Assembly: GCF_000143415.4 (NCBI RefSeq) | Contig: NW_003314263.1 | Location: forward strand, 124,001-188,000 | Origin: Selaginella moellendorffii | Lineage: Eukaryota > Plantae > Lycopodiophyta | Direction of reading: 5' to 3' | Length of the DNA stretch: 64,000 bases | Shown here: piece after piece, positions 14,379 to 49,300 of the stretch | How positions within the stretch are numbered: the first letter of the stretch is position 1 | Layout: the number at the start of each line of letters is the position of its first letter | The notes under the pieces: model-generated | What the model was told of the DNA's origin: nothing | The model's input: the letters and a program-made list of their open reading frames with translations, nothing else | Database searches by the model: none | Translations under genes and position numbers: made by a program

Positions 14379-15471
14379 CACGTGTCATGTGTTAGTCCTT
14401 TTGGGTCCCTTTTTGGAGCCTCGCTTATTGCTCTCTTTGTGCTTGTTCCTCGAGCACTTTGTTGGGAGTTCCACTCCCGCTCTCGACCTTTCAAGGCGAA
14501 GCTTTTAGTCCAAATGTGTTACGCTCGTTTGGCTTTCGCTTCGGCCACTACCACGTGGCGCCCTTCTGGCTCCACTTTGGGGCCTAGGGATTTTGTGTCT
14601 CACACACGGGTTCGATTCCCAATGATTAGTGGCTACTTAAAAGTATAATATACCCTTGAGCAAGGTATATTCCTACCCCTAAAATTTGAAATCGTATGTA
14701 TTGGGCATCCGTGCATACATCCTTCCTCTTGTGTGGAGTATCCATGGACGAAAGTATCCATCGTGGGAGTGCAGTACGGGTGGATGACTAGTTGCCTCAC
14801 ATGGAATAACTAGTCTACACAATGGAAGGATTGGTAGATTTAGTGCGGAAATGGAGGTGTTGGTTCCCCTTGGCTCAGTAGGGGTTGTTAGTCAATAGTC
14901 AATGAGGACATTGACATCTCTAAAGGGGGGGTGAGTGTAGCGCATGTGATCATGGGATGAGATTTGGATATACTGTCACCGTGGATCCTTGGAACCTTGG
15001 GGGATAAATGGGGATAAAATAGCCACTAAAAGCTCTATTTCGTTAAAGTGGGAATTGTCATTATCCCACTTGTAAAATAAGGTTTCCAAACCTTTATATA
15101 GTATATAAATATAACAAAATTCAACTGCATTAAGGCACATGCCATTTTATTTTAAACAAGGAAATGTCTACTTAATCACTTCTCCTCCCCCTGCCACTGC
15201 TTCACCTCTCTCTTCTCCTTGTCATCGTCGTCCAATTTCTTTCCATCCTTTTAATATTGGCTCAGTTGCTCCGAGTCTAGGTGGAGCCCAAGTCCCCATT
15301 CAATCTTTACTTTCCCCTTATTAATAAAACAACTTCGCAGACTTCCAATAACATGCTGTAACACTTCTAGTATAATGCAAATCCTCTCAAAGAATTGTCT
15401 TTTAATATTAATACAATGGCATGGAACCCCATGCCATAATAAGTTACATTTTTAAATAAATACATGCCATC

Positions 15472-18400
15472 TCAGACTGTTATTTTTTGCCTCCAACGCC
15501 TATACAATAATCTTGGAATTTCATCACTCTCCACACTATCAGGATTTAAACCCAATAGTAATGCCATCTCTTCTCTAATACGTCCACGCTCATGTTCAGT
15601 GGTCGAAGAACCCATCCGGTTGAGCAGATTATGGAGATGCGGATAGTGCTTGGCTAGACAATATACATGCCATAAATGATGACTGGTGTCTGTCCGATCA
15701 AATGGCTTCTGATATACCGTTCCATCTGCCATTTGGTTGATTTCTGCAGCCACCTCCTGGACTGGCCGGTTCTCTATCACCATCGCTTCAAGCCGTTTTG
15801 CAAGGTCCCCCAGAACATACGGTTTCTTCTCCCTAGTTTCCATACTGCAAGAGATGGGGTGCACTGCATATGTGTGCGTGTTCGCTGCAGTTTTAATCGG
15901 CGAGTCATCGATGATGAGGATTTCACTTGACCTAGCAGTCCGGTTCAGCACTACAGCCTCTGCCTTGACGAAGATGGGCTTGCTACCCCTCACATGGACC
16001 ATAGTCAAGCAATCCTCCTACGTTAGGAGAAAGTCAAATGGTAATATTACTCGCGTCTGATCGTGCATCATCTGTAGCAACGTTAATGCATTGTGGCGCA
16101 TCATGGATGTCCAAACTCCCAATTGCAAATTGAACCCGGCCCTATGTTTTAAGTGTCGCATGGTCATTATTAGATCCCGCAGTTTCTCCCGTGTGATTAA
16201 TGTGAATCTGTCTCTTTTGACCAACTTGCGACCGCAGGCTTTGGAGGGTGCAGTGACATTCGAGGACGAGCCACGCTCATGGGAGAAAAGGACACCGTTC
16301 AGATCAAAAACGATACAGTACTTTCGCCGTGACTCTGAAATGAAATGCGTCAGCATAAAAAATGGTACAAGTCAATTTTACCATCTACAATATTAGCGAA
16401 TGGTGCTCCCGATGGTCGTTCAGAGGGTTTTGGTCGAGGAAACGTGAAGGGCGGAAATACTCTCCTCTGCAATGTGGGGTCAATCGCATCCGATGGCGTG
16501 TGGGCACATGCCATTTCAGCTGTAGACTCTGGTACAACTGGCTCAACAGTGGCATGGGGTGGTTCCGATGGCGTGTGATCACACGCCATTTCAGCTGGTG
16601 CCTCCGTTGGCAAAGTGGACATGACTGAACAGGCAGCAGGGGCGGTGTAGGGAGGTTCCAACGGCGCGTAGTCAGACGATTGGGCACACGTTGGAAATGA
16701 GGATACGACCGGCTCGGCGGCTGGGGCGGCCTCATGCGGGTCCAATGGCGCCTGGTCACCGTCAGTTGGATACGTGGACAAGATTGACTCAGTGGTATGG
16801 GCAGCATCAAGTGGAGCGTGGTCAGCTTGCTTGGCGTTGATATGGATAGTAGCCTCCACCAGCTCTGATGACTCTTGCAGGCAAGTAGAGTCCACTGGCT
16901 GATCCATATGCATGTCCAAATATCTCCCTTCGATTGAGATGGTATCCTCCCGTGCTACTAAAAACAAACTCATTAGCACATTGAATCGACTATACTGTAT
17001 TTACCATCAACTGCTATTGAGGAACTAGGACCGATATCACTTGGGCGCACTGCTGATTCTGAAGGATTGGACATACATTTCGACCCTTGCTTGGCACTAT
17101 CCTTCCTCGACACTAAAGGCTAGAGTTTGTATCTTAATTCAACTGAATAATCTCTACTTACCATTTCTTCTGCGACCTACATGGACAATGTTAGAAATGG
17201 TAAAAGGTTAGGAATGGATGTACTATTATTTACCTAATGGTTTGTCTTGTATGACCTTCCTCCGCTGCTCTTTGGCCACCTCAGACTGGCCATCGTCGTC
17301 ATCATCGTCATCGTCGTTATTGTGATCATCACCATTGTGAGGACCATCCAAGTCCTCTTCATCCTCCTTTTCTTCATCCTCCTCTTCTTCGTCCTCCTCT
17401 TCTTTGTCCTCCTCTTCGTCCTTCTGCTCTTCCTGCTCATTATCTTTCTCTGGCTCCTCATCCCCCTCCTGCATTTCTTCCATAGGCTGCTCAGGCTGGA
17501 TGGCTTGTTCTTCCAGGACCATCTTGGGAAAATCATCTGGCCGAGTCTCCATCTCAAAATACAAGACATCCATAGCCTGTTTTAGTGCGTGACCTAGGAC
17601 CGTATCCTCACCCGACTGTCTTAACATGGTTTCTGCACGTTCTTGCACCCTTCGAAGACGACGAGATGAGAAAAACGTGGCCCTGACTTGAAAAGCATCC
17701 CTCATCCATTGTACCTCTCCATTGAGATTGGGGAAGGGGAGTCCGCCATAGGAATCTGAGTCAGAAGGTGGTGACTGGCTCCTTTCACTCAGCCCTTGAT
17801 CTGCAATGAATGGCATGAGCACACACGCCATAACCGCGAGGCATTACCTATCATCTTTTCGTTGCCCTTCTTCCTTTTCGAATCAAACGCCTCTGATCCC
17901 GACGACTGTCCAACGTGCTTTCGCTTTTTATGACCACTGTCAGTTTGAGCTTGGCTGGTGCTTGCCTGTTTTGCCTTTGAAGAAGTGTCTCCTGCAAGGA
18001 ATGGCATGAGACCACACGCCATTGTAAATATAATTTGTACCTCCTTTTTTCCTATTGCTTGTCTGTTTGTCCTTGTTCGACGCGCCACCAGTGCGTTTTT
18101 CAGTCCTCGTGTCTGAATATTCACAACGATCTATAATCAAAATGGCGTGAGGCCTCATGTGACCTTACCTTGTGCAGGTTGTGAGCTCGGCCTAACATCA
18201 GTAGCTGTTAACGCCGTTTCAGCATTTGGGGGTGGCCACGCTCCTGCATACAGAGCTTGTGAGATAACATTTAAACTTAAAGTGCGTACTCACCAGGTTC
18301 GTAGAGAAGATACTGTTTTTCTTTGGCAACTGTAATTATATGCTCCATTGAAGTCACCTCTTCAATGGAGTTTGTCACCGCAACACACGGGACACCCTTG

Positions 18401-21077
18401 AGTAGTGCGGCTCGAAAGAATAGTCCGCCGCAGTTGTACTCGACAACGCATTTGCCCTTGGAGTCACCCGCTATTGCGTTGAAGACCCAGCTGAGCATTT
18501 CCCATGCTGCACCTGGAGCTTTCTTTGGATTCGAAAGCTCCATAGCCGTCTTCAGTTCCTCAGGCACAGGTAAATTGACCTCCCTCAGATCAATTCGATC
18601 GGCTTTGTTGAACGAAGCTGGGAAGTCACTCCAGTCCCACTCTGCTGCAGGACCAATAACAAGGGCGAGTGTGAAGATGCGGACATTCGTCGGTATCTTC
18701 TTCTTAGCCATTATCCCATGGATCTCCCGCATCTCCTTGCCTTTCAACCGAGCCTTCACCTTGTTCAAGGCCTTCCAGAACTTGTGATAGGATTCGGAGT
18801 CGTAGATCATATAGTGGACTGAAGATTCCACCTCCGCAAGTCCCACCATTAAGTCAATGATGGAGCTGACTTCGTCTGCATGAGTGATCTCCTCATTTGT
18901 GAAGTCCATCACACAAAAGATGTTCTTGACCTGCTCATCTCCGCGGGAAACGATGCTCCTCCACCTTTGATCCTCATCCGAATTCACGTATACCCGGTAA
19001 GGTTCTCGATAGGCCTCTGCTGCGGGGTCGAGCTGTTTCTGAAGCCGGCAGTCGACATCCCTCTTAATGAAATTTGGATACTGATCCAACTTCTCAGCTT
19101 TACTTTTCGTGGCATCCCGCAACAGATCGATGAACTTGGGGGCCCCCTTCACGTAGTCGTCGATGTCTTCATTTGACAAGTCCAGCTCTTCCATCATCTC
19201 TTGCGTGGTGTCGATGCTCACCCTCGCCACGGCCACTTGCTCGAAGATCCAATCCTTCAATAGCGCACGAGCTCTCAGAGTCGTGCACAAGTCCTCGTAT
19301 GTCACAATATGGCCGGGAGTCATTTTGGTCTTGTTGAAGACTACCTCACCACGTAGAAGAGCATTAGCCACTGTCAGAAGGTCGTCGTCGTCTAGAGACC
19401 GCGAGAAACGCAAGGCGTTGAGCTTCAAATCATTGGGCTTCCGGCCGTCCTCCACACCCATTGAGTTTAGCAACTCCCCGTCATGGTACCTCCTCAGCAC
19501 ATCTACCCATTTGTCAAAAACAACTTTTGTCGCGAGTAGAATGTTATGGATGCTGAGTGTGTCATTGACCCCCAGTGTTTTCGAGAGAAGACTCGAGAAT
19601 TCCTGCAATGGAAATGGCGTGAGGCCACATGCTATGCCACATGCAACGAGGCTTACCTGCCAGGCGCTACTTGCTAGTGCACGTCCTTGTCCTAGTTTTT
19701 GTGGCTTCTTCAGTTGAACCCGGAGCTTCCGTGTTCGTGCCAATGTCTCGTGCAGACCCGATTTGTAGCACGTTTCTTGCTTGACATTCTGCGCGTGGGA
19801 GATGTATATGATAGATCGGAGGGGCGAGTTGCCTTTTATCAGACGGACAACTCTTGTCTTGAAGACTTTCTTCACCTCCTCGCCCACCATAATATCCACA
19901 ACTATCTGTTGCATCGCCAAGCTAGAATGCTGCCCGGAGACGGCATAGAACCGGATGTTCTGATCGTCCAACACCTTCCTATTGATCAAGTCTGGAAACC
20001 TCGTCTCGCCCTTCATTGTTCGGTAGTAGGGGATCACGTCTGCGATGTCGGGTGTTACTGGACTTGCCAGCATCTTCTGCTTCAGTTTCTCCACCCACTC
20101 ATCAGATACTAGCCTGTGGTTGTATTTGCTTTGGATCTCGATACGGCTCACGTCGATTGTATATACTTTGTTGGAATAGTAACAAGTACTATTATCTGCG
20201 ACGATTTTTGCTGCCTCTTCTTGCTCTTTCTGCTCTTTGCGGCTCTTCTTTTTGGTGGGTGTAGTGTTCGAACCCGAGGCAATGGCATCACCGAGTAGCT
20301 TCTTTTTTGGAGCAGCAGAGTCGGACGTCGGCTTGAGCTTGACCACCCTTTTCTGCTTCGGGGTAGTTTCCAGATCGACCCCCTTCCCCTTCGCTTCGCA
20401 AACTGGAGGCACTCTCAACGGCTCAATGTTGGAATATAGTTTTTGAACATCGCCGTAGGTGAGGTCCATGGATTCCATGTGATCTTCATAGACCCGCAGC
20501 GTCTTTGAAATTGTGGGCCTCCTGGACAACCTCTCCCTAGCTCCCTCTAGGAATTCCTCATAGCCGCTGCCCCCCTCCGGGAAGCCGCTAGGATGTGCAA
20601 GGTGGATCTTGAAGGCGGACGCTGTCTCTACCACAAGTGCCAGTCCATATTCTTGCATGGAACTGCATGGAGTGTCTGTCACTTGGATGAGGATCCCCAT
20701 GCATTCTTTTCTCCCACCATCTGTGTTGTACAGCATCAGATCCTCGCCTTCCATCCCGAAAGTCCAACTGGTGAGCTCCTCCCCCTTCTCTGCATCCACA
20801 TTGACAGTGGCTGGAAGAAGAACGCAATTCCTCGCCTGTTCAGAAATGCACAACAATTAGAGCTGACAGATGAAAAGCTAGCAGCTGGAAATAACGTGAG
20901 GCCACACGCCATTCACCACTGCATCAGATGTCTTGAGGCTGCATCCTAAGATGGCGTGAGGCTACACGCCATCTGTAACCGGACTGCACTCGAGAGCCCA
21001 ATCGGTGCATGCCAATGTTGCTACTGAATGGCATGTGGCCTCATGCCATTTTCTACTTGGCCTAAAAGACTTACCAT
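15472..21077 (-). CDS. Transposon cargo gene, 11 exons, ~1636 aa: ParB/Srx-like domain + degenerate amino-methyltransferase-like fold + basic/acidic/Pro-rich linkers + FCP1/NIF-type HAD domain; one premature stop at 16018-16020 in this copy
   Basis: Hand-spliced GT-AG introns at 20836-21074, 19603-19656, 18244-18293, 18113-18168, 17992-18040, 17801-17847, 17177-17233, 17113-17161, 16958-17004 and 16335-16381. They join the separate ORF-track pieces into one 4911-nt frame. Motifs: FYAVSGQHSSLA; NPKKAP...KCVVEYNCGG.FFRAALLKG; IVFDLNGVL...GVWTS...ILIIDDSPIK. The first exon (ATG only) is the least certain part. Confidence 0.8.
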
Positions 21078-24038
21078 TTGAAGCCGAATGGAGGCCGTGA
21101 CAATCGAGGCTGGACTCGCTGGCGAATGTGCACTGTGTGTGCAGCGGATCGTAGCAGCAAGGCTACTCTGCCACTTACAGTTGGAGAGTGGTGCTGAAAT
21201 CTCCCGGGACGCCAAGTGGGCTGCGTGTGGGTGGCGGAGTGGGCGGCGGAGTTGGCGGCGGAGTTACAAACTGGGTGTGTCTTGAAGTGGACGACGATGC
21301 ACACGAGCGCGATGCGAGCGCGAGTGTGATGCAAGCGCGAGTGGACGCCGATGCACACGAGAAACCTGTAGAGAAGTGAGCGTGATCGCGAGTGGGAGCG
21401 CAATGCGAGCGGGAGCGCGAGTGTGATGCGAGCGCGAGCGCGAGTGTGCGAGCGCGAGTACAAAGCAAAATGCAAAACCTAACCTCACACGCGCGAAATG
21501 TCACAATGGTTGGTAATCCCGCCACGTCATCATTCCTTGGACTTGGGCGCCACCATTAATTTCTGGATTGCCGCGCGCATGCAAGCACGCAAAATCCAAA
21601 AGATATCCGCAACGTCATCATTCCTCGGACTGCATGCATGCGAAATCCAAAAGAAAGATCATGATTGGGATATCATTTAATACCCTCGCTATATTTATAC
21701 CATGCATGATTGGATATTCCAAAGCATCTTGTATTTCCAAAAATGGCAGATGTTCAGCTAAATAAAGAAATTCTATCTGTTTCTATTTTTCTCTCAAATC
21801 AATATTATAGCGTGTGGGCTCATGCAATTTTGAACCAAAGAAACCCAAAAAACGTTGGACCCAAAATATTTTGAAAAAACCCAAAAAACCCTAAACATTT
21901 TAAACCCAAAAATCCAGGCGTCCTGTGGCGTTATTCCTTGAATGGCGTGTGGGTGCATGCCATTTTCAGGGCCAAATGCTGAATGGAGAAAAATTCCCTT
22001 TCAGTGCAAATGCTGCAAGAGGCAGATGCCGAGCACAACGGACTGTAACTACCTCACATGACACAGATAAACTTTTCTCTATTTGGCAAAGATAAACTTT
22101 ATAGCGTGTGGGCTCATGCAATTTTGAACCCAAAAAATGCACCAAAAAATTCTCGGCGTCATCTGGCGTTATCTCTTGAATGGCGTGGGGCCGCATGCCA
22201 TTTTCAGGGGCACATAGGAGTATATTCCTAGGATATTCTGACACGCGCGAGATTTTTTTGAGTTTTCTGGAGATCCAACCGTTAGATCGCAACTAGATTT
22301 TACAGAATGGTATACAATGTCTTTCTTGATGACCTTGCAAAGAAGCATCTCGATCGGACACCACATGAGACCACACGAGCCTTACAATGTTTCAGGGGCA
22401 TTTGCCATAGATCCGACCGTTATTTTGCTCCAAGATTTTACAGTTTGGTGTGCATTGACCTTTCCATCAACACTGCAAAGGGACATCACAATCAGATGCG
22501 GGATCACAAGAAACTAACTTCACTAACTCTGGTTTCACCAAGATCTACGTAAGGAGTTATGAAATGAAAGGACCCTCTCTATTGAAATGTGTTTATGGTC
22601 CTAGGGGCATTGTGACATATCAAAGGATTTTGCATCAAGTTCTGTATTTGCATGTTTATCAAGCTACTGAATTGCTAAACCCTAAACCCTAAACCCTAAA
22701 CCCTAAACATGTGGCAAATGCTGCGTGAAGAAAGATGCCCTTTCTGGGCAAATGCTGTAAGAGGCAGATGCCGAGCATATGTATCTCAGGCTAGCGAAGG
22801 GGACAAATGAAAGCTAGCTATAAACATGACGGGATGCAAATAGATTACTAGGCTGGTCCTGCGAAAATCAAAAACCATAATTGAAAACATTGAAAATGCA
22901 AAAAGAAAGGTTTATAATATTTTTGAATTTTAAGCAACCAATGGAATGTAAGTAGGGCATGTGTTTGTAAGTTTAAAAATGCCTCAACCACTTAAATTCC
23001 CAAGTAAATAAAGCTGTTTCTATTTTTGGTACAGGTAAACTTTATAGCGTGTGGGCTCATGTAATTTTGAACCAAAAAATGCACCAAAAAATGCTCGACT
23101 AGCATTATTCTTTGAATGGCGTGTGGCCTTATGTCGAGCATTATTCTTTGAATGGCGTGTGGCCTTATATTGCCATAAATGGACGTACACACACAGCATA
23201 ATTATTCCTTTACACGGCGAATAATCTTGGCGCGGATCGCTGACATGGCATGGCAAAGTTTGAATCACTGACATGGCACAGCTGGATCGAGGCAAGGACA
23301 TGATGTGACAAAGTTCAACCTCCGACAGCAAAGTCTAGAAGCTACTCAGTTTGAAATTTGTCAGAGGAATCATAAGATTTGGTTTGTCAGAGGATTTGAT
23401 GTGACGTTCAAGCGTGTGTTATTTTTGAATTCTCGAACTCATTCCTAGGTCTATCATTTTTGTGCGCCGTGTTCTTGGTTCTGCTGAGCGCAGTGAGCGC
23501 TGCTTGTGTAAGCGGCGTTGTGGGCTATGGTTTATGCGTCTACGAGCGGTTGCGGCATTGCGAGTGCCATTGCGAGCGGCAGTTTATGCGAGTGGCAGTT
23601 TGTGTGAGCGGCGCTACGAGCAGTTGCGGTGTTGCGAGCGGCGCTACGAGTAGTTGCGGTGTTGCGAGCGGCACTGTCTTTGGTGTGGCTACCGCTTCCT
23701 CTTGATATTTGGCACTTGTGCTTCCTGGTATGTTCACCATGGAATGGCTTAGGACCACATTTAGAAATGGCATGAGGCCACATGCCATCTTGGGCCCTTG
23801 CAATTTCATGGCTAGCGTATTGTCATGTATGTTTTTACTTGTCTGCAGCTGTGTGTATATCAAGATGGCATGAGGGCTCATGCCAATTTTGTGAATGCGA
23901 AATTTCACGTGGGTGTCAATAGCATGTTTGAATAATGGCATGTGGCCTCATGCTATTGAGGTTGTTTGGTATGTTATGATTTAGGCCATTCTCCAATCAT
24001 TTTTTTTATGGTCTTAACTTCTTTTCTGCACTTTCAGA
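21078..24038. promoter_or_regulatory. Divergent intergenic/promoter region between the cargo gene and the transposase
   Basis: Lies between two head-to-head genes. Contains CpG-rich GCGAGCG clusters (21300-21460, 23540-23672), duplicated blocks with paired palindromes, and a central telomere-repeat tract. Confidence 0.6.
22675..22708. repeat. Short plant telomere-type tract (AAACCCT)4 inside the transposon
   Basis: CTAAACCCTAAACCCTAAACCCTAAACCCTAAAC; homologous tracts at ~44740 (3 units) and ~47884 (4 units). Confidence 0.9.
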
Positions 24039-27000
24039 ATGGCCTTCAGGGTTGGGGAAAAGGTTTACATTTTGAATGGTGGGAAGAGAGTTGCAAAAGG
24101 GACCCTTGTATCTATGGATCGGAACTTTGTTATACACTGTCAAAGGCTTGGGGAAGGCAATGCTGCTGTATCAGTAGAGACTGTCTTCGATGGGAATGTG
24201 GTCGCTATTGAACGAGGAGAGATGGTCGTCGGGGTAAATGTTGTTGTTGCCTTGAAAAATCTTCAGAAGAAAGCAGATGTTGGGGACAGCGCAAGTGCGA
24301 CGCATGTTCCCTCCGTGGATCTTAAGAACCGTGCTACATGGATTCAGGCAAAGGTGTTTCTAAACAACCCCGAGGGGGAGGTGGTAGGTGAGGGCTTAGC
24401 CACAGTTGTCGATCCAAGAGATGCAGTTGCTAATCAAGAATTGGGCTGGGATGATATTGGAGTTGCGATTTTAGAGGTTGTTGACACAGAAGAAAACAGT
24501 CTGACTATTGGAAGCATTGTGCGGTGGAAATTGAGGCACTTAGTGTTTGAGAATGTGAAGGATTCACAATCAAACACCACTACAACTGATGACAGAACAT
24601 CTCTTCATGGGAAAAGAAAGTACACCTTCCTAAAGCGCAGCCAAAGGGATCGGAGCAACGAACCGAAAAGGCAGAAAATGGCGATGGAGGTTCGAATGGT
24701 CTCGACAATTGCTTGTTGCAAGAGGAGGTGCTGTCAACATGCTGATTGGGATGCTATTGAAGAGGAGAGAGCAAGATACAAGACATTGTCCTGGAAGGCA
24801 GCTCGCAATTTTGTGTATGAGGCATTACGGTCATCTGTTGATGCTTCAGAACATCAGGTGGGGGGCATGGTCTTCCAGAGGGGTTTGGTCTGCATGAAGG
24901 CATGGAGAATCATTTATGGAGTCCCTCGAACCACATTCTACAGAATCAAAACTGAGTTCGAGGAACAAAGGGTTCAACAGGCAGTCCATGGGAACGACGG
25001 TACGCACAAAACCAGGGGTCATGTTGTATATGGAGAGGCAATCTTCAAGAGGTTTGTCGAGACATGTAGCGAGCAGCAACCACATAAAACCTGCCTCTTG
25101 GAAGATGGAACACGAGACACCCAACGAGTTCTCCCTTCCATGTATACCAAGGGGGCCATATTGGAAGATGTGAATCGGGAACTCCAGAGTAATGGCTATA
25201 GGAAGCTGAGCCAATCTAGATTTAGTAGATTGTGGAGCAACAGGTTCAGGGATGTGAGTATAGGAAAGTACTCCAGCTTTTCAAAGTGTGACAAGTGCAC
25301 TGCTATCAAAATGGCTTTGTCGAAGAATTCTTGCAGCGCTCAAGAGCGAGAGACGTTGGTTAGAAGGCGGCTCGACCACAACATCGAGCAGAGAAGCTGC
25401 AGGACTGCATATTATCATAACAGGATTCTCTCCATGGAGAGACCTGACTCTTACCTCTGCATCATCCACGACAAAATGGACCAGAAAAAGACGTGCTTAC
25501 CTCGACTCAATCCTGCCCCCAAGGCAATCTCTTCATCCATGCAGCTGCCTGTGTCTCTGTTTGGCATAATCGCTCATGGGCATGGTGCCCAGAACTATGG
25601 GAACTTCTTTGTACCTCTATGGGGTGGCGGGGGTGCAAACATGATGATTGCGTCCCTAGCAAAACACTTAAGGTCTCTGCAAAGTGCGCAGACTGAGCTG
25701 AACGGCCAACCCTTGCATAAGGCCCTTGTCGATCGAACCCCATACAGGGTTCAGCTGGAGGAGGAGCAAAGGCTTGCAGTATCGTGTGGGGCCCCATGCC
25801 ATCCCAGTGAATATGTTGGCCGTCAGATTGTAGGGTTATCACGTGAGGCCTCATGCCATTCCGACGAGGCTGGTCGCCCGGTGAATGCACAGCCTCATCC
25901 AAACGAAGAAGAATCTCAAAAAAGTTCTTGCGGCCGATGTGGCCTTCCACCCCATCTTCTGCTCCAAACAGACAATGCTGGCAGTGAGAACAAAAACATG
26001 TACGTCTTCGCGTACTTGGCGATGCTTGTTGCCAAAGGCATATTTGAAACGGTTACACTTGGCTTTCTCATGGTTGGGCACACTCATGAAGATGTCGATG
26101 CCATGTTCAGTCACCTGGCAGAGTCCCTCCGGCGATCCAATGTCCTCACCCTCCCACAACTCTACGATGAATTCCAAAATTGCATCAAAGGCACTGTTGA
26201 AGCTGCATTTCTGACAGAGGTTCCAGACTTTAAGGGGTTTGTAAGAGGCTACATCAGGGACGGATCCGAAACGCTGATTGGCCACTCCAAGCCTCTTCAG
26301 TTTCATTTCAGCATGTGTGACGGTGCTCCAGTGATGAGGTACAAGATGAGAGAATGGGACACAGTGTGGCTGCCAGTGGACGGCATTGAACTCTTCAAGA
26401 GAGATCCCATAACTGGGGAACCTATGATTCCTCAGGGTTCCCCACGGCCGATGCACTCGGATGGACTCAAAGACCAGGAAAGTATAGTGGCCGGGATTAG
26501 ACAGCATATTGCCTTCTGGAAGAGGGGGTTGGTGTTTGGTGGAGAATCCTATTTTCAGAGGTGCAAGCCTTTGCTCGAATACTGGGAGAAGATTATATCT
26601 GCTATCCAAAATGGGCCGGTTGTATATGAAGAATTGGAAGAGTCCTTTTGGCCAGAACCCAGAGCACCAGATAGTAGCGGAACAATGTCCTCTGGAAATG
26701 CAGTGACAGATAACGATGTTGAGGATCACTATTGTGGGTCGAGGAACAAGAAGCCGGATTCAGCATTCAATCTAGTACAGGTCTGCAAAGGAATGGTCGT
26801 GCTTGTCAGACCCAGTAATAAAAAACAAATGATATGGGTGGGGCGCTGCATCACTGATGCAGAGGAGGACGCGGAAACTAACTCCTTCAATGTAACTGTG
26901 GAGTGGTTCAAGCCAAGTTCCGGATATACGAACGATTGCCTAGAAAAGAGATGGGTGCTAAATCCAAGGGATCCCAGCATGAGCATATCGGTGGATAATG

Positions 27001-27180
27001 TTGTGCATGGTTGGATGCGGAAGCAGAGTGCCACCATCACCTTGCCAGACCATGCAAGAGATGCAGCAAGAGCATTCATAACTCGGGTTCAAGGTGAGAT
27101 TCATGAATATTCCTTTACTAAGTTTCTAATGTATTTTATTTCAAGGTGAACAATCCGAATCTGAATCAGAGGAGGCGTGA
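24039..27180 (+). CDS. Sola-like DDD transposase, intact (ORF 24039-27149; probably spliced via intron 27094-27145 to end ...VQGEQSESESEEA*, ~1029 aa)
   Basis: Motifs CDKC, IIHDKMDQKK, LLLQTDNAGSENKN and FLMVGHTHEDVDAMFS. Two N-terminal VA.G...D....LG....V.V repeats and a C-terminal beta-barrel-like module. It lies inside TIRs. Confidence 0.9.
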
Positions 27181-27817
27181 TGGCATGTGGCCTTACGCCA
27201 TTCCTAGGTGAGATGATATAAATAACAAGTATAAATTCTTAGTTGTTCTAGCAAATCTTACTTAAAGTTCAAGGTGAACAAGCCGAATATGAATTCATCG
27301 GATTGTTATAACAAATTGCGAGGTGATGGCATGAGGCGATACGCCATTTGAGAGTGGTAGCCATTCCTATATGTGGTGAGTGAAGTATTTATTAGAAATA
27401 CCTCATTCAATTGTGCACTTCTAAGTCTTGGTCCACTTAGTACTGTTTGCATGTTTTTATTTTAATTCTTTCTCTAAAATGTTATTTAGCATGTGGCTTC
27501 ATGCCATTGCTCTCCACAATCGTGCATTGAATTTCTATCCTTGCATAATACTTCTCCATATATATAGCATGTGCGCACATGTGATATGGTTCATTAGGCC
27601 TGATATAGTGTGTGAGGTAAAACAAAGATGATGTGACATATGCATTTACCAATCACACGTGCATAAATCTAATAATATGGCGTGTGGCCCATATTAATGG
27701 CACATAAACCCATATTGTGGGCTTACGTGCTTTATGTACCATCATTCCTTTGCAGCGTGTGTGTTGTTTTCCTTTTATAACACAACGAACTCCATATTTT
27801 AGGGTGAAGAGCGTTCT

Positions 27818-28076
27818 CATGGCAAGCACAAAATCTGTAAGTGAGGCAGAAAAGGAGACGGAGAAGAAGATAGGTGAAGATGTAGAATATATAAGTCTTC
27901 CAAACTCCCCGTACTATACTCCAGGTGATCATTTTTCTGAACAAACGGCAACATTAATAACTATCGAGAACGCCCCAGTAACGTTAGAGACAACAATCCA
28001 AAGCAAAACAACTAACCCGGAGAAGGATGATAGTACCGCTGAGAGTACCAAAAAGGAGGTGTCCACTAGCGCTTAG
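27818..28076 (+). other. Short low-complexity E/T/K-rich ORF (MASTKSVSEAEKE...) in the transposon 3' region; possible exon or small gene
   Basis: Open in copies 1 and 3 and preceded by TTTTAG. Copy 2 has a deletion near 53447. No recognisable domain. Confidence 0.25.
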
Positions 28077-29789
28077 GCTTATAATGGCGTGTGCCCTCAT
28101 GCCATTTACTTGATCACCAAATACCTTTTTCCCTTTGCACTAGTATATCTTAATACCGGTCTGAGAAATAGAATGGCATGTGCCCTCAGGCCTTTTACTA
28201 AATCACCTTTGAAAGAAATGCAAGCCTCTATGTCGTAAAAAAAAGGTACTAGAGAAATTCCTTAATAATATGAATGTTATTTAGTTTCATGAAAATACAC
28301 TAAGGGTCAAATGAGTTAAATGACTTCTCCAGACTAGCAATGCCTCTTGCTACACCTTCACAATTAGATTCGTTAGAAAAAGATAACATTGAATAATATC
28401 TAAATGTTCTCACCATTAAGTTATATGTCTGGCTAATAGGAATGATGTTCATCTTGGAAAGCTCACCACACGCTCAATGAACAAACAAATAGTGTGTGCG
28501 CGCATGCCATCGCTCTTCTTTAGCTTCAGATTCGGCTTGTTCACCTTGACAATGAGATTTATTATACAACCAGATGGACTCAGTCTGGACATAAAGTCAC
28601 CGCGCTAGTCACCATGCCCTAGATATGTCTAGCCCCTGGACAAAAAACATATAATTTCACGTCATTTTCAAATACTTGAAAATTTGTACCTAGTCCCATT
28701 TTACTGAATAAATCCCACTTTAACGAAATAGAGCATCTAAGGGCTCTCTCATCAAGCAATTGCCCCTTTTCCAGTTAGCTTAAGAGGAGAGAGATAAGGT
28801 GTGCTACATTTGACATCAATTACATCATATTAGTATTGGTGCAACAAAAATTCTTGACACAAAGATTTTTCTTGGAAATAAAGGCAATGGAGGGTTTTTG
28901 TGCAAATACATCAATGACCCCTTTATCCTTCTTTCAAGAGTATCATCAAAAGGTTTACTTAGTAATAATTCATTTTATATTCACTTTTTAATCTTGTTTT
29001 ATAATAAAAGGTCCTTTGTTATCCTCATTGTGCTAGTTGAAATGGGTTTGAGTTTATCTTCTATTGCTTGGCTTATTGAGATAAGACAAATTTAGTTGTG
29101 CATGGGTAATCTTGAGCTTGAGCTTCAATTATTCCGGGTGGAGCTAAATCAAGCTTTTGACATCATTCTTAATATGGATTAATTGTATTGCGATCATGCC
29201 AAATATGACTTTAAAGTTTCCCCCCTTTGTCTCATACTCTTTATATCTCTTTGACAAGGTACATGGGAGGATCTAAGTTCTTAGGCAAACGCCCAAGAGG
29301 CTGGACATGGTGGTCATTTTATCCCTTTATTTTACCTCTACATCCATCACTTTAATCTTTTCATCACTATTTATTATGTTTCCTTTTTATTTTTCTATTC
29401 CCTCTTATAATCTCTCGGATGATCTTTATTTTATAGCAAGTAACAACTCAAGAATGAATATGTTAATCTATTTGACTTTGACCTTTTATTAAGCTAAGAT
29501 TGCAACAGTGACTCATCCTATTTCAACTAAAGATGCTTATCTAATCAAAATTTCTATTGAGCATTTGTTACAAAATGAGAAAAAGATTTTATGACAAATG
29601 TTAAAGAGATATTAAAGAAGGGTCTTGAATATCAAAGTTTAGAAATGTGAATTTCATCTTATGACAAAGCTTAATGAAAGTATTTATTTGCATAAATTAT
29701 TACCCATTAAACTACATAGATATGTACCTTCTACTTCACTCTACTAGATATTGGTTGCATTTCATATTAAATTTCACTTCTGAGTACTA

Positions 29790-30251: not shown

Positions 30252-32273
30252 GATGTTGAGGATCACTATTGTGGGCCGAGGAACAAGAAGCTGGATTCAG
30301 CATTCAATTTAGTACAGGTCTGCAAAGGAATGGTCGTGCTTGTCAGACCCAGTAATAAAAAACAAATGATATGGGTGGGGCGCTGCATCACTGATGCAGA
30401 GGAGGACGCGGAAACTAACTCCTTCAATGTAACTGTGGAGTGGTTCAAGCCAAGTTCCGGATATACGAAGGATTGCCTAGAAAAGAGATGGGTGCTGAAT
30501 CCAAGGGATCCCAGCATGAGCATATCGGTGGATAATGTTGTGCATGGTTGGATGCGGAAGCAGAGTGCCACCATCACCTTGCCAGACCATGCAAGAGATG
30601 CAGCAAGAGCATTCATAACCCGGGTTCAAGGTGAGATTCATGAATATTCCTTTACTAAGTTTCTAATGTATTTTATTTCAAGGTGAACAATCCGAATCTG
30701 AATCAAAGGAGGCGTGATGGCATGTGGCCTTACGCCATTCCTAGGTGAGATGATACAAATAACAAGTATAAATTCTTAGTTGTTCTAGCAAATCTTACTT
30801 AAAGTTCAAGGTGAACAAACCGAATATGAATTCATCGGATTGTTATAACAAATTGCGAGGTGATGGCATAAGGCGATACGCCATTTGAGAGTGGTAGCCA
30901 TTCCTATATGAGGTGAGTGAAGTATTTATTAGAAATACCTCATTCAATTGTGCATTTCTAAGTCTTGGTCCACTTAGTACTGTTTGCATGTTTTTATTTT
31001 AATTCTTTCTCTAAAATGTTATTTAGCATGTGGCTTCATGCCATTGCTCTCCACAATCATGCATTGAATTTCTATCCTTGCATAATACTTCTCCATATAT
31101 ATAGCATGTGCGCACATGTGATATGGTTCATTAGGCCTGATATAGTGTGTGAGGTAAAACAAAGATGATGTGACATATGCATTTACCAATCACACGTGCA
31201 TAAATCTAATAATATGGCATGTGGCCCATATTAATGGCACATAAACCCATATTGTGGGCTTACGTACTTTATGTACCATCATTCCCTTGCAGCGTGTGTG
31301 TTGGTTTCCTTTTATAACACAACGAACTCCATATTTTAGGGTGAAGAGCGTTCTCATGGCAAGCACAAAATCTATAAGTGAGGCAGAAAAGGAGACGGAG
31401 AAGGAGATAGGTGAAGATGTAGAATATATAAGTCTTCCAAACTCCCCATACTATACTCCAGGTGATCATTTTTCTGAACAAACGGCAACATTAACAACTA
31501 TCGAGAACGCCCCAGTAACGTCAGAGACAACAATCCAAAGCAAAACAACTGACCCGGAGAAGGATGATAGTACCGCTGAGAGTACCAAAAAGGAGGTGTC
31601 CACTAGCGCTTAGGCTTATAATGGTGTGTGCCCTCATGCCATTTACTTGATCACCAAATACCTTTTTCCCTTTGCACTAGTATATCTTAATACCGGTCTG
31701 AGAAATAGAATGGCATGTGCCCTCAGGCCTTTTACTAAATCACCTTTGAAAGAAATGCAAGCCTCTATGTCGTAAAAAAAAGGTACTAGAGAAATTCCTT
31801 AATAATATGAATGTTATTTAGTTTCATGAAAATACACTAAGGGTCAAATGAGTTAAATGACTTCTCCAGACTAGCAATGCCTCTTGCTACACCTTCACAA
31901 TTAGATTCGTTAGAAAAAGATAACATTGAATAATATCTAAATGTTCTCACCATTAAGTTATATGTCTGGCTAATAGGAATGACGTTCATCTTAGAAAGCT
32001 CACCACACGCTCAATGAACAAACAAATAGTGTGTGCGCGCATGCCATCGCTCTTCTTTAGCTTCAGATTCGGCTTGTTCACCTTGACAATGAGATTTATT
32101 ATACAACCAGATGGACTCAGTCTGGACATAAAGTCACCGCGCTAGTCACCATGCCCCAGATATGTCTAGCCCCTGGATAAAAAACATATAATTTCACGTC
32201 ATTTTCAAATACTTGAAAATTTGTACCTAGTCCCATTTTACTGAATAAATCCCACTTTAACGAAATAGAGCAT
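30252..32273 (+). mobile_element. 5'-truncated right-end fragment of the Sola-like transposon (copy 3)
   Basis: Colinear with 26715-28736. Includes the transposase C-terminus (30330-30686) and the right TIR ending GAGCAT at 32273. Confidence 0.93.
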
Positions 32274-44500: not shown

Positions 44501-44607
44501 TCTTCTTGTAGTGTAGTTTTAGTTTTAGGGACTAGATTAGATTTGAAACTCCTAGGAAGATCTCGTGTGGATGTTTCCTCCCAGTTTAGAGATTCGAGGA
44601 GTTTTCA
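41557..44607 (+). mobile_element. 3.05 kb retroelement-derived insertion with frameshifted gag and two CCHC knuckles, no pol and no paired LTRs
   Basis: TG...CA ends. 5-bp TSD ATCTA at 41552-41556 and 44608-44612. Empty sites at ~22545 and ~47752. Motifs PIFTG...HLKQF, FSHTLKGKALDW, CTKCKNEGHTYLEC and CQICEREGHTAKKC. Confidence 0.88.
42070..43914 (+). pseudogene. gag-like ORF (N-terminal part in ~41860-42000 in another frame)
   Basis: Retrotransposon gag core, zinc knuckles and a Q/N/Y-rich region; frameshift near 42000. Confidence 0.75.
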
Positions 44608-49072: not shown

Positions 49073-49300
49073 ATGGCATGAGGCCTCATGCCATCTTTGG
49101 CCCCTCCTAGCCTATTGCCATATTCCTTTTGCCTTGCTGCAACTGTATATATTTTTGTATGGGTGACTAGTCATGCACACAAAAATATATACAGTTGCAG
49201 CAAGGCAAAAGGAATATAGCAACAGGCTAGCAGGGGCCAAAGATAGTGTGAGGCCTCATGCCATTAGTGGTACCACTAATGGCATGAGGGCTCATGCCAA
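49073..49300. repeat. 192-bp fold-back (49073-49264) plus a second palindrome centred on GGTACC, delimited by three 22-bp motifs
   Basis: Arms pair around TGACTAGTCA (49164-49173). ATGCCATTAGTGGTACCACTAATGGCAT follows. Confidence 0.93.

What the first reader, a model, noticed from the sequence alone, without database searches (positions are those of the whole stretch)
15030..28736. Candidate new system: a large Sola-like DNA transposon encoding a ParB-like multidomain protein and carrying ~30 palindromic cis sites
Seen: a TIR/TSD-bounded 13.7 kb element with two head-to-head genes, and a 22-bp palindrome repeated along its entire length but not noticed in flanking DNA. Known: bacterial ParB proteins load at clustered palindromic parS sites, and Arabidopsis VANDAL transposons encode VANC proteins that bind short motifs in their own non-coding regions to escape silencing. 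Inference: the cargo protein recognises the palindrome and marks, protects or compacts its own element, making a self-targeting protein-plus-site module in a eukaryotic transposon. I cannot tell whether this family has already been described.
Basis: partly seen in the sequence, partly recalled or inferred. Interest (0 to 1): 0.92.

Follow-up and report, generated by a model that had tools for sequence, protein, structure and literature searches.

The report
Giant plant transposon with ParB-like gene
This is an intact, recently active 13.7-kb Sola-1 DNA transposon in a land-plant genome that carries a ParB-like accessory gene and about 25 copies of its own 22-bp palindrome; the element is real and tidy, this kind of element was first noted in algae in 2025, and it is not shown which of its proteins reads the palindromes.

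Summary
Window 15030-28736 is bounded by 23-bp inverted ends and a 4-bp duplication (CTAA). It carries two divergent genes and 24-28 copies of the palindrome AATGGCRTG-N6-CAYGCCATT, where 0.06 are expected by chance. All 56 sites in the window lie inside these three copies.

The transposase is Sola-1: 45% identity to the catalytic block of the published Ectocarpus Sola1-1 transposase. The accessory protein has a ParB/Srx-fold domain (predicted structure, then a Foldseek structure search). It also has a decayed relic of a DNA methyltransferase and probably an NIF-like phosphatase domain.

The idea is not new. A Sola-1 element with a ParB-methyltransferase gene was reported in Ectocarpus in 2025. 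ParB-like accessory genes next to inverted-repeat arrays were reported in red-algal Plavaka elements in 2025, with the same self-binding hypothesis.

The two arms of the palindrome vary independently, which fits protein half-sites and not hairpins. Relatives that lack the cargo gene carry their own lineage-specific palindrome arrays just upstream of the transposase. This weakens the claim that the cargo reads the palindromes. The binder is unresolved, and I lean slightly towards the transposase.

The parts
15026..15029 (.). Left copy of the 4-bp target-site duplication (CTAA)
   Evidence: Read directly from the sequence. The matching CTAA is at 28737-28740.
15030..15052 (+). 5' terminal inverted repeat, AAGCTCTATTTCGTTAAAGTGGG
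   Evidence: 22 of 23 bases complementary to 28714-28736 (inverted repeat I2). Copy C has perfect ends, AAGCTC...GAGCTT.
15472..16356 (-). Two adjacent ORFs (16018-16356 and 15472-16008) that carry the two halves of an NIF/FCP1-like HAD phosphatase-like domain (motifs VFDLNGVL and ILIIDDSP). This is either the 3' part of the accessory gene or a third gene.
   Evidence: Pfam NIF, E 0.026, for 16021-16356. Both pieces align to the NIF domain of P0046, E 0.003 each. P0046 combines a cargo-like middle domain with NIF. The exon joins were not determined.
16350..18124 (-). Other minus-strand ORFs downstream of the main cargo ORF: a Pro-rich one (16350-16979), an acidic one (17226-17831), and one with a weak DUF7039 match (17789-18124). 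It is uncertain whether they are coding. Several of them begin inside palindromes.
   Evidence: The palindromes translate as MAC..MP, which creates spurious ATG starts.
18277..20856 (-). Main ORF of the accessory ('cargo') gene, 859 codons. The first Met is at 20754. It is intact in copy A.
   Evidence: No Pfam family. Only 13 weak relatives among 1.84 billion representative proteins.
19657..20184 (-). ParB/Srx-fold domain of the cargo (about residues 225-400), with the motif AVSGQHS whose S-G-Q-H-S core is invariant across the family
   Evidence: AlphaFold2 on a 7-sequence alignment, pLDDT 72. The top 39 Foldseek PDB hits are all of the ParB/Srx superfamily: best E 1.3e-4, probability 1.0, sulfiredoxin aligned at rmsd about 4 A over 112 columns. 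The motif is seen in alignments A1 and A6.
18997..19599 (-). Middle domain of the cargo (about residues 420-620), shared with P0035 (Selaginella), P0038, P0042, P0043 and P0046. Its fold was not determined.
18307..18939 (-). C-terminal region of the cargo (about residues 640-850). It looks like a decayed relic of a beta-class N6/N4 DNA methyltransferase. A motif I-like stretch survives (VVEYNCGGLFFRAALLKG). DFTN stands where the catalytic DPPY motif would be.
   Evidence: The cargo aligns (E 0.002) to L008:2849-4327 at exactly the stretch that hits Pfam N6_N4_Mtase (E 2.4e-4) and five PADLOC Type II methyltransferase models. The cargo itself gives no family hit and its single-sequence fold failed. 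The assignment is tentative.
20857..24038 (.). Region between the two divergent genes. It has the highest site density (13 sites). A three-site cluster lies 35-172 bp upstream of the cargo ORF and another lies 104-272 bp upstream of the transposase ATG. Site-bearing segments here are internally duplicated.
   Evidence: (repeat families D12, D13, D17-D19).
24039..27149 (+). Sola-1 transposase ORF, 1036 aa, intact. Candidate catalytic residues lie in IIHDKMDQ (D478/D481), LQTDN..ENKN (D645) and GHTHEDVD (E684/D685/D687).
   Evidence: Pfam DUF7869, E 6e-42. Relatives at 27-36% identity, with the invariant residues listed. 45% identity, E 3e-20, to the catalytic block of Sola1-1_Ec32.
15416..15437 (.). 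Palindrome cluster 1 (1 site). Exact half-sites also at 15138, 15463 and 15666.
16493..16589 (.). Palindrome cluster 2 (2 sites)
17810..18163 (.). Palindrome cluster 3 (2 full sites and 1 degenerate site)
19614..19635 (.). Palindrome cluster 4: a single site inside the cargo ORF, in the linker between the ParB-like and middle domains (residues about 406-413)
   Evidence: In copy C a 19-bp deletion (copy A positions 19627-19645) removes the right arm of this site and shifts the cargo reading frame.
20891..21049 (.). Palindrome cluster 5 (3 sites), just upstream of the cargo gene
21807..22201 (.). Palindrome cluster 6 (4 sites)
23044..23173 (.). Palindrome cluster 7 (3 degenerate sites)
23767..23956 (.). 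Palindrome cluster 8 (3 sites), just upstream of the transposase ATG
25781..25859 (.). Palindrome cluster 9 (2 sites) inside the transposase ORF. They lie in the hypervariable linker (residues about 555-632) between the first and second catalytic Asp.
27180..27507 (.). Palindrome cluster 10 (3 sites)
28084..28194 (.). Palindrome cluster 11 (2 sites)
28489..28510 (.). Palindrome cluster 12 (1 site), 226 bp from the 3' end
28714..28736 (-). 3' terminal inverted repeat
28737..28740 (.). Right copy of the target-site duplication (CTAA)
30252..32273 (+). Copy B: a 5'-truncated fragment holding the last 2 kb of the element, 98.6% identical to copy A, with 6 palindromes
34062..54111 (+). Copy C: a second full element, 92.7-99.7% identical to copy A (most segments 96.6-99.7%), flanked by the duplication TGTG. 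It carries a 3-kb insertion with a gag-like ORF (41557-44607) and an internal duplication of about 3 kb. Its cargo gene is frameshifted, its transposase ORF (49453-52563) is intact, and it holds 26 palindromes.

Best explanation
Window 15030-28736 is an intact, recently mobile, autonomous giant cut-and-paste transposon of the Sola-1 superfamily in a land-plant genome.

Its plus strand encodes a 1036-aa DDE/D transposase. A divergently transcribed accessory gene encodes a ParB/Srx-fold domain, a middle domain of undetermined fold and a catalytically decayed relic of a beta-class N6/N4 DNA methyltransferase. It probably also encodes an NIF/FCP1-like phosphatase-like domain.

The 22-24-bp palindromes (AATGGCRTG-WGGCCW-CAYGCCATT) are pairs of independently constrained half-sites. 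That makes them binding sites for a symmetric dimer of an element-encoded protein. They are not hairpins.

Three-site clusters lie roughly 35-270 bp upstream of both long ORFs, which suggests operator-like control of the two divergent promoters. Twelve clusters spaced about 1-2 kb apart tile the whole element, even inside coding linkers. This suggests that the element is coated, marked or bridged along its length.

Cargo-less Sola-1 relatives carry their own lineage-specific palindrome arrays immediately upstream of the transposase ORF. Such sites therefore look like an ancestral attribute of the transposase lineage. The most parsimonious primary reader is the transposase, through its conserved N-terminal CCxxxCC, HTH-like and Cys-rich region. 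The ParB-like protein would then act on the same sites or on DNA already marked through them.

Shown here: the anatomy of the element, its Sola-1 membership, the ParB/Srx fold, the specificity of the sites, the independence of the half-sites, and the arrays in cargo-less relatives. Inferred: who binds the sites, and what binding achieves.
For: Recent activity:
- Three copies lie within 40 kb, mostly 96.6-99.7% identical (one segment 92.7%).
- Both ORFs are intact in copy A.
- The two complete copies have different 4-bp target duplications.

Identity of the element:
- Sola-1 transposase.
- ParB/Srx fold in the cargo.
- Methyltransferase relic.
- NIF-like pieces.

Specificity of the sites:
- 56 sites against 0.06 expected, all inside element copies.
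- None in the 91 other loci.

Protein half-sites and not a base-paired structure:
- The two arms do not co-vary. The covariation score is 0.140 against 0.152 for shuffles, and 382 of 500 shuffles score at least as high.
- The variable CpG changes almost only at positions 6 and 17, 31 times by my tally of alignment A7. The mirror positions 5 and 18 change 3 times, although neutral CpG decay should hit both equally.

Even tiling:
- The gaps between the 12 clusters have a coefficient of variation of 0.48, against 0.90 for random placement, P about 0.005. The cluster definition was chosen after seeing the data.

Link to the transposase lineage:
- None of the 85 loci carrying transposase relatives encodes a ParB-like protein.
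- L001 has 18 palindromes, L002 8, L009 10, L012 6, L010 4, L013 3, L022 4, L027 5 and L030 10. Each family has its own sequence, and most arrays lie 0.1-2 kb upstream of the transposase ORF.
- L012 and L013 come from one assembly yet carry different palindromes. This argues for an element-encoded reader and against a host factor.
- L009, among the closest transposase relatives (35% identity), shares the half-site core ATGGC with the window's element.
Against: - No binding data exist.
- Contigs that carry only cargo relatives also hold long palindromes next to the ParB-like gene: L005 has 3, and L008 and L003 have 1 each.
- Red-algal Plavaka families place inverted-repeat arrays next to their ParB-like gene PAG3 (bioRxiv 10.1101/2025.02.11.637652). 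A link between ParB-like genes and palindromes therefore recurs in a second transposon superfamily.
- In most cargo-less relatives the arrays lie on one side of the transposase gene only. In the window they cover the whole element, and that spread could be a cargo-specific feature.
- The terminal inverted repeat contains no half-site, so the transposase would need a second DNA specificity.
- Only three of the cargo-less loci with arrays (L001, L002, L022) have about 10 kb of flank. The short contigs cannot exclude a cargo gene further out.
Confidence: 0.45

Rival explanations
1. The first reader's model, which is also the published hypothesis for red-algal Plavaka PAG3. The ParB-like accessory protein itself recognises the palindromes as parS-like loading sites. 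It then spreads, bridges or recruits effector domains, so that it marks, protects or compacts its own element.
For: - The cargo has a ParB/Srx fold, and bacterial ParB, Noc and KorB bind palindromes (established knowledge).
- Cargo relatives on contigs L005, L008 and L003 are flanked by 24-29-bp palindromes with a different sequence.
- Clusters spaced evenly every 1-2 kb, including sites forced into coding linkers, fit a reader with a limited spreading range.
- ParB-like accessory genes are associated with inverted-repeat arrays in a different superfamily as well (bioRxiv 10.1101/2025.02.11.637652).
Against: - Analogous arrays exist in Sola-1 relatives that have no detectable ParB-like gene, three of them with about 10 kb of upstream flank.
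- In ParB the sequence-specific module is the HTH domain and not the ParB/Srx domain. No HTH could be shown in the cargo.
- The family motif is SGQHS, which lacks the Arg of the GxxR nucleotide-binding motif.
- No Pfam ParBc match at the sequence level.
Confidence: 0.35
2. The palindromes are binding sites for a host transcription factor, or other cis-regulatory modules that drive the two divergent promoters. No element-encoded reader is involved.
For: - Site density is highest in the region between the genes, with three-site clusters just upstream of both genes.
- The spacers often contain TGGGCC/TGGGCT-like cores, which I recall as resembling the plant 'site II' promoter motif.
Against: - Sites also lie in introns, in coding linkers and near both ends, far from the promoters.
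- Within the window the motif occurs only inside the element copies.
- Related families differ in palindrome sequence even within one assembly (L012 against L013).
- The spacer is the least conserved part of the site.
Confidence: 0.1
3. The repeats are a by-product of repeated internal segmental duplication of site-bearing segments, or of a tiny palindromic insertion sequence spreading within the element. They have no present function.
For: - Segments that carry sites are duplicated in the region between the genes (repeat families D12, D13 and D17-D19).
- Copy C has a further 3-kb internal duplication.
- After insertion the sites are not better conserved between copies than other DNA: 2.4% against 1.7% substitutions.
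Against: - Most sites sit in unrelated local contexts.
- The changes at the CpG are strongly asymmetric, 31 against 3, which shows long-term constraint on site sequence.
- Analogous arrays recur in many related families.
- The spacing of the clusters is more even than random.
Confidence: 0.05
4. The palindromes act as DNA cruciforms or RNA hairpins, for example as processing, replication or recombination signals.
For: Perfect 8-10-bp arms could pair, and palindromes would form hairpins in transcripts from either strand.
Against: - There is no covariation between the arms. The percentage of paired cells and the covariation score do not exceed shuffles.
- At pair 6-17 the counts are GU 10, AU 8, GC 3 and non-pairing 5, as expected if the arms vary independently.
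- The mismatches do not follow the transcribed strand.
Confidence: 0.03

Closest known systems
Sola1-1_Ec32 of the brown alga Ectocarpus (Genome Biol 2025, PMC12477816)
   Same: - A giant Sola-1 element (21.5 kb) with 4-bp target duplications.
- An accessory gene on the strand opposite the transposase, encoding a ParB-like domain plus an N4C/N6A DNA methyltransferase domain.
- The authors suggest that such proteins bind and epigenetically modify their own transposon.
- Its transposase catalytic block is 45% identical to the window's transposase.
   Different: - The host here is a land plant.
- The ends differ: 23 bp here against 282-bp imperfect inverted repeats there.
- The methyltransferase part here is reduced to a weak motif I relic with no DPPY motif.
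- An NIF-like domain seems to have been added here.
- That paper does not mention palindromes or binding sites.
PAG3 accessory gene of giant Plavaka (CMC/EnSpm) transposons in the red alga Bostrychia moritziana (bioRxiv 10.1101/2025.02.11.637652; Curr Biol 2025)
   Same: A ParB-like N-terminal domain sits in a transposon accessory protein, with arrays of inverted repeats next to the gene. The authors propose explicitly that the protein binds and modifies its own transposon.
   Different: - The transposon superfamily differs.
- The partner domain there is a 2OG-dependent oxygenase.
- The repeats there are tandem arrays next to the gene. Here the clusters are dispersed over the whole element.
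Bacterial ParB/Noc/KorB with parS, NBS or OB sites, and prokaryotic ParB-methyltransferase fusions
   Same: A ParB/Srx-fold domain and palindromic sites of 14-16 bp or more, present in several copies. ParB fused to a beta-class N6/N4 methyltransferase is a common architecture on phages and plasmids (Iyer, Abhiman and Aravind 2011, as cited in PMC12477816; otherwise from my own knowledge).
   Different: - No ParA partner.
- No match to the ParBc profile at the sequence level.
- SGQHS in place of the GxxR motif.
- An HTH domain was not demonstrated.
- The host is eukaryotic and the sites span 13.7 kb.
En/Spm TnpA with its 12-bp subterminal motifs, the Harbinger Myb-like protein, and VANDAL VANC (from my own knowledge of the literature)
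   Same: In each case an element-encoded protein other than the catalytic transposase binds short motifs repeated in its own element. It thereby controls the promoter, brings the ends together or counteracts silencing.
   Different: No sequence or fold relationship is known. The motifs in those systems are subterminal or non-coding and are mostly not long perfect palindromes. No test against these families was run here.

Membership tests
Sola-1 superfamily of DNA transposons | Transposase homologous to Sola-1 DDD/E transposases | tested here: met
   A 75-aa catalytic block of the published Sola1-1_Ec32 transposase aligns to residues 642-712 at 45% identity, E 3e-20. The Cys motifs (CC...C and F..C..C...K) and the stretch around the first Asp also match, by my reading. 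Pfam assigns only DUF7869.
Sola-1 superfamily of DNA transposons | 4-bp target-site duplication | tested here: met
   CTAA flanks copy A and TGTG flanks copy C.
Sola-1 superfamily of DNA transposons | Target preference AWWT, called a hallmark of Sola1 in PMC3845634, citing Bao et al. 2009 | tested here: inconclusive
   Neither of the two target duplications fits AWWT, but there are only two. Sola1-1_Ec32 is described only as 'biased towards ending in A'.
Sola-1 superfamily of DNA transposons | Conserved acidic catalytic residues | tested here: met
   D478, D481, D645, E684, D685 and D687 are invariant in 9 relatives. Which of them form the catalytic triad is inferred.
ParB/Srx superfamily | ParB/Srx fold | tested here: met
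   AlphaFold2 model with pLDDT 72. The top 39 Foldseek PDB hits all belong to this superfamily, with probability up to 1.0 and TM-score (normalised to the target) of 0.45-0.60 for sulfiredoxin at rmsd about 4 A. E-values are modest, 1e-4 to 1e-1.
ParB/Srx superfamily | Sequence-profile match (Pfam ParBc or similar) | tested here: not met
   No hit in Pfam, NCBIfam or PADLOC for the cargo or for six relatives, even at E up to 10. A profile search against PDB sequences also found nothing.
ParB/Srx superfamily | Nucleotide-binding GxxR-type motif with its Arg | tested here: not met
   The family-invariant motif is S-G-Q-H-S, with Ser where the Arg would be. From memory, it most resembles the DGQHR variant of DndB/DUF262-type members.
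ParB/Srx superfamily | HTH domain that binds a palindromic parS-type site | not testable with these tools
Binding needs an experiment.
Bacterial ParABS partition system | Partner ParA ATPase | tested here: not met
   None of the seven larger element ORFs scanned against Pfam matches a ParA or Walker ATPase family. The smaller ORFs were not scanned.
ParB-like plus DNA methyltransferase accessory proteins of transposons (Iyer et al. 2011; PMC12477816) | Accessory gene with a ParB-like domain, on the strand opposite the transposase in a giant element | tested here: met
ParB-like plus DNA methyltransferase accessory proteins of transposons (Iyer et al. 2011; PMC12477816) | N6A/N4C DNA methyltransferase domain with catalytic motif IV (DPPY) and the SAM-binding motif I | tested here: inconclusive
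   The cargo has no methyltransferase family hit, and the profile search against PDB and the single-sequence fold both failed. The relative L008 hits PF01555 (E 2.4e-4, below the curated cut-off) and five PADLOC MTase_II models at motif I, and the cargo aligns there. By my reading, motif IV is replaced by DFTN, DAAH, DATT or DLRR, so the domain is probably inactive.
Plavaka PAG3-type accessory proteins (bioRxiv 10.1101/2025.02.11.637652) | ParB-like N-terminal domain plus a 2OG-dependent oxygenase domain, with inverted-repeat arrays adjacent to the gene | tested here: not met
   The ParB-like domain and the inverted repeats are present. No oxygenase domain was found, and the transposase is Sola-1 and not Plavaka. 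The resemblance is in how the system may work, and the element is not a member of that family.
VANDAL/VANC anti-silencing system | Homology to VANC or a VANDAL (Mutator-type) transposase | not tested
   No VANC reference sequence was available. The transposase is Sola-1 and not Mutator-like, so membership is excluded on that ground.

The most novel reading that the evidence does not exclude
The ParB-like accessory protein loads at the palindromes and spreads or bridges over a limited range of about 1-2 kb. Selection therefore keeps site clusters tiled at that spacing across the whole 13.7-kb element, even inside coding linkers. The protein would deliver its pseudo-methyltransferase and NIF/FCP1-like (Pol II CTD-phosphatase family) modules to its own chromatin. 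That would make it a eukaryotic, transposon-borne analogue of ParB-parS that marks 'self' DNA to control transcription or silencing.
Probability: 0.2. Interest if true: 0.85.

Novelty: new variant of a known kind. Interest (0 to 1): 0.55.

Why it matters
Accessory proteins that let a transposon recognise and modify its own DNA are known in only a few cases, such as En/Spm TnpA and VANDAL VANC. ParB-like accessory genes in giant algal transposons were noticed only recently, and their cis sites were not defined.

This locus offers a land-plant example that is intact and recently active. Its sites are sharply defined and numerous, which makes the hypothesis directly testable by DAP-seq or EMSA with two candidate proteins and one 24-bp probe.

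The survey made here adds a caution and a lead. Lineage-specific palindrome arrays upstream of the transposase appear in a subset of Sola-1 relatives (at least 10 of 85 loci) even without the ParB-like gene. The arrays may therefore belong to transposase biology, and the ParB-like module may have been added later.

Tried and rejected
1. Word-indexed homologue searches for the cargo, with the single sequence and with a 12-sequence alignment, found nothing. Only the exhaustive HMMER search gave 13 weak relatives, and I set two of them aside (P0034, an RTX-repeat protein, and P0036).
2. Sequence and profile searches of the ParB-like region against PDB, Pfam, NCBIfam and PADLOC found nothing. The fold assignment rests on AlphaFold2 plus Foldseek.
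3. A single-sequence AlphaFold2 run on the C-terminal 260 residues gave pLDDT 39, which is unusable, so I did not submit it to Foldseek. A profile of the C-terminal domain against PDB matched only a generic glycine-rich loop in cysteine synthases.
4. I thought the cargo and the transposase might share an N-terminal domain that aims both at the same sites. BLASTP shows no similarity, so I dropped the idea.
5. The hairpin or cruciform reading is rejected, because the arms do not co-vary.
6. Comparing substitutions between copies inside and outside the sites gave 2.4% against 1.7%. This says nothing about function, because decay after insertion is neutral.
7. I could not find the ends of the related elements, so I cannot say whether their arrays are subterminal.
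8. A metagenome search with the ParB-domain alignment found no confirmed relatives.
9. I could not name the host species. The evidence for a land plant is a flanking PLS-class PPR gene with an E motif and a cargo relative in Selaginella scaffold GL377575.1.

Full report
OBSERVATION

Its left end (15030-15052, AAGCTCTATTTCGTTAAAGTGGG) is the inverse of 28714-28736 at 22 of 23 positions. CTAA flanks both sides.

Two long ORFs point away from each other. One is 18277-20856 on the minus strand (859 codons). The other is 24039-27149 on the plus strand (1036 aa). More minus-strand ORFs follow the first one, down to 15472.

The palindrome ATGGCRTG-N6-CAYGCCAT, allowing up to 2 mismatches, occurs 24 times inside the element. 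A looser repeat search gives 27 copies. The full consensus is a 24-bp palindrome, AATGGCRTG-WGGCCW-CAYGCCATT.

The window holds 56 sites where 0.06 are expected. The other 32 lie in two further copies of the same element. One is a 2-kb 3' fragment at 30252-32273, 98.6% identical to copy A. The other is a rearranged full copy at 34062-54111, flanked by its own 4-bp duplication, TGTG. The 28.2 kb of non-element DNA holds no full site and only 2 exact half-sites, about the chance number by my calculation. The element holds 41.

HOST AND ACTIVITY

A flanking intronless PLS-class PPR gene with an E motif (1121-3721) and Ty3-type retroelement genes point to a land plant. I could not determine the species.

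Three copies lie within 40 kb, and most aligned segments are 96.6-99.7% identical (one is 92.7%). Both ORFs are intact in copy A, and the two complete copies have different target duplications. All this indicates recent transposition.

Copy C has a 3-kb insertion with a gag-like ORF, an internal duplication of about 3 kb, and an intact transposase ORF. It also has a 19-bp deletion that removes the right arm of the palindrome lying inside the cargo ORF, and this shifts the cargo reading frame.

THE TRANSPOSASE

Pfam assigns only DUF7869, E 6e-42. Relatives at 27-36% identity share invariant IIHDKMD, LQxDN..NKN and GHTHEDxD blocks and N-terminal Cys-rich and HTH-like motifs.

The supplement of the Ectocarpus transposon paper (PMC12477816) prints the Sola1-1_Ec32 transposase. 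Its catalytic block aligns to residues 642-712 of the window's transposase at 45% identity, E 3e-20. That family is described there as a 21,549-bp element with a 4-bp target duplication and a best BLASTP hit to Sola1-1_PPa. 'Sola-like' is therefore correct, and more precisely the element is Sola-1.

The AWWT target preference quoted for Sola1 (PMC3845634) is not seen in the two duplications available. Two is too few to decide.

THE ACCESSORY GENE

The 859-aa ORF matches no Pfam family. It has no close relatives: 13 weak hits among 1.84 billion representative proteins, the best credible one at E 5.5e-9. I found four regions in it.

1. ParB/Srx-fold domain. Six relatives align over residues about 225-400 and share an invariant S-G-Q-H-S motif. 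An AlphaFold2 model built from that alignment has pLDDT 72. Its top 39 Foldseek PDB hits are all ParB, Noc, KorB, PadC, sulfiredoxin, SbnI or Atu1540. The best E-value is 1.3e-4, probability reaches 1.0, and sulfiredoxin superposes at about 4 A over 112 columns. Sequence profiles do not detect this relationship, and the Arg of the GxxR motif is replaced by Ser. I accept the ParB/Srx fold with about 0.8 confidence.

2. Middle domain. Residues about 420-620 are shared with other relatives, including a Selaginella gene. Its fold was not determined.

3. Methyltransferase relic. The C-terminal region resembles the end of a beta-class N6/N4 DNA methyltransferase. The relative on contig L008 hits Pfam N6_N4_Mtase (E 2.4e-4, below the curated cut-off) and five PADLOC Type II methyltransferase models at motif I. 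The cargo aligns to that stretch: VVEYNCGGLFFRAALLKG against ILDFFSGGQVLKTALFCG, E 0.002. By my reading, no family member has DPPY where motif IV should be. They have DFTN, DAAH, DATT or DLRR. The cargo itself gives no family hit and its single-sequence fold failed. I read this as a decayed, probably inactive relic, with about 0.5 confidence.

4. NIF-like domain. ORFs 16018-16356 and 15472-16008 carry the two halves of an NIF/FCP1-like HAD domain. The evidence is Pfam NIF at E 0.026 and pairwise E 0.003 for each piece against P0046, which combines the cargo middle domain with NIF. It is unknown whether this is the 3' part of the same gene.

WHAT THE LITERATURE ALREADY SAYS

PMC12477816 (2025) reports that the 21.5-kb Sola1-1_Ec32 carries, on the strand opposite its transposase, a 1104-aa protein with a ParB-like domain and an N4C/N6A DNA methyltransferase domain. 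[quoted passage not shown] 2011 and Petroll et al. 2025). It suggests that these proteins bind and modify their own transposon. That paper does not mention palindromes.

The Bostrychia paper (bioRxiv 10.1101/2025.02.11.637652) describes PAG3 of giant Plavaka elements, a ParB-like domain joined to a 2OG-dependent oxygenase. [quoted passage not shown] It proposes that PAG3 binds and modifies its own transposon.

It has not been tested experimentally.

WHAT THE PALINDROMES ARE

The two arms vary independently. On 26 distinct sites, the percentage of paired cells (86.9 against 87.6 for shuffles) and the covariation score (0.140 against 0.152; 382 of 500 shuffles at least as high) show no selection for base pairing. 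This argues against hairpins or cruciforms and for two half-sites read by a symmetric dimer.

The variable R/Y position is the CpG of ATGGCGTG. By my tally of alignment A7, it changes at positions 6 and 17 in 31 cases, but at the mirror positions 5 and 18 in only 3, although CpG decay should hit both equally. The sites share descent, so this is not a formal probability. It still shows constraint at the sequence level.

The differences between copies A, B and C inside the sites are largely transitions at this CpG. That would fit methylation of the element, which is an inference.

The sites form 12 clusters. Gaps between clusters run from 0.36 to 1.95 kb and are mostly 0.75-1.95 kb. Their coefficient of variation is 0.48, against 0.90 for random placement, P about 0.005, with a cluster definition chosen after seeing the data.

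Three-site clusters lie 35-172 bp upstream of the cargo ORF and 104-272 bp upstream of the transposase ATG. The three sites inside ORFs all lie in poorly conserved linkers.

WHO READS THEM

I fetched 80 metagenome loci and 5 assembly contigs that encode relatives of the transposase. None encodes a ParB-like protein, whether tested by tblastn or by profile search of six-frame ORFs.

At least ten of these loci carry their own recurrent palindromes:
- TATCGTCG-N3-CGACGATA: 18 copies in L001 and 8 in L002.
- CCTATGGCC-N4-GGCCATAGG: 10 copies in L009.
- TTGGCCATATGGCCAA: 6 copies in L012.
- A GCTCAAAC core: L010 and L013.
- Other sequences: L022, L027, L030 and L046.

Where the flanks allow a judgement, most of these arrays lie 0.1-2 kb upstream of the transposase ORF, though L046's array lies downstream of its transposase match. 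L001, L002 and L022 have about 10 kb of upstream flank and no cargo gene. L012 and L013 come from one assembly but differ in palindrome, which points to an element-encoded reader. L009, among the closest transposase relatives, shares the ATGGC half-site core with the window's element. In these relatives the transposase is the obvious candidate reader.

There is evidence on the other side too. Contigs that carry only cargo relatives also show long palindromes next to the ParB-like exon. L005 has three copies of GGAGCAAGCGATATCGCTTGCTCC, L008 has a related one, and L003 has a 29-bp one. The red-algal observation links ParB-like genes with inverted-repeat arrays in a different superfamily.

I therefore leave the binder unresolved. 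My estimates are 0.45 for the transposase as primary reader, 0.35 for the ParB-like protein, 0.10 for a host factor, and the remainder for no function or a structural role.

VERDICT

The finding is a real, cleanly bounded, recently active giant Sola-1 transposon with a ParB-like accessory gene and a family-specific palindrome.

It is a new variant of a kind first noticed in algae. What is new is the land-plant host, the decayed methyltransferase plus NIF-like module, and the dispersed tiling of sites.

The mechanistic claim that the cargo reads the sites is unproven, and cargo-less relatives weaken it. The locus is a good experimental entry point.

Noticed in passing
window 30252-32273 and 34062-54111: Two more copies of the same element lie in the window: a 3' fragment of 2 kb, and a full copy with a 3-kb insertion carrying a gag-like ORF (41557-44607) and a tandem internal duplication of about 3 kb. 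Three insertions within 40 kb suggest local hopping or a transposon-rich region.
   Followed up: yes
window 38666/38667 (copy C), corresponding to 19627-19645 in copy A: A 19-bp deletion between short direct repeats (CCACATGC) removes the right arm of the palindrome inside the cargo ORF and shifts the cargo reading frame in copy C. The transposase ORF of copy C stays intact.
   Followed up: yes
L001 8212-9514; L002 7847-8461; L009 16-1497; L012 642-1583; L030 50-690 and 2835-2937: Cargo-less relatives of the transposase carry lineage-specific arrays of 16-26-bp palindromes, often in tandem units of 34-59 bp, mostly just upstream of the transposase ORF. I found no description of this for Sola elements in the papers I searched.
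   Followed up: partly
L005 31-54, 1753-1776, 1802-1825; L008 114-141; L003 1567-1595: Contigs encoding ParB-like cargo relatives have long perfect palindromes upstream of the gene and just after the ParB-domain exon. The palindromes of L005 and L008 share the core AGCAAGC..GCTTGCT.
   Followed up: partly
window 24087-24197 (transposase residues 17-53): The N-terminus of the transposase weakly matches Pfam Transposase_23 (TNP1/EN/SPM), E 0.005. The relative P0011 does so too (E 0.021), and DUF8039 is precomputed for some relatives. This is a small domain of unknown role that is shared with CACTA-type elements.
   Followed up: no
window 17789-18124, minus strand: This ORF has a weak match to DUF7039 (E 3.7e-4) and contains a palindrome. 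Several short ORFs in the element start at the ATG of a palindrome (translated as MAC..MP) and are probably spurious.
   Followed up: no
window 14000-14390: A tandem array of an 11-12-bp unit (TCGGGTCCATC and variants, about 30 units) lies just left of the element, inside a long ORF (13497-14648). It is unrelated to the palindrome.
   Followed up: no
window 1121-3721, plus strand: An intronless PLS-class pentatricopeptide-repeat gene with an E motif (866 aa). This is the main clue that the host is a land plant.
   Followed up: partly
window 56592-58979, minus strand: Reverse transcriptase, RNase H and integrase ORFs of a Ty3/gypsy-type retrotransposon lie to the right of copy C.
   Followed up: no
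L004 10001-11425 (Selaginella moellendorffii scaffold GL377575.1): A stand-alone gene (P0035, 451 aa) is homologous to the middle and C-terminal domains of the cargo, including the motif IVEYGCGGQIFKA, but lacks the ParB-like domain. It lies among ordinary host genes and may be a domesticated or decayed copy.
   Followed up: no
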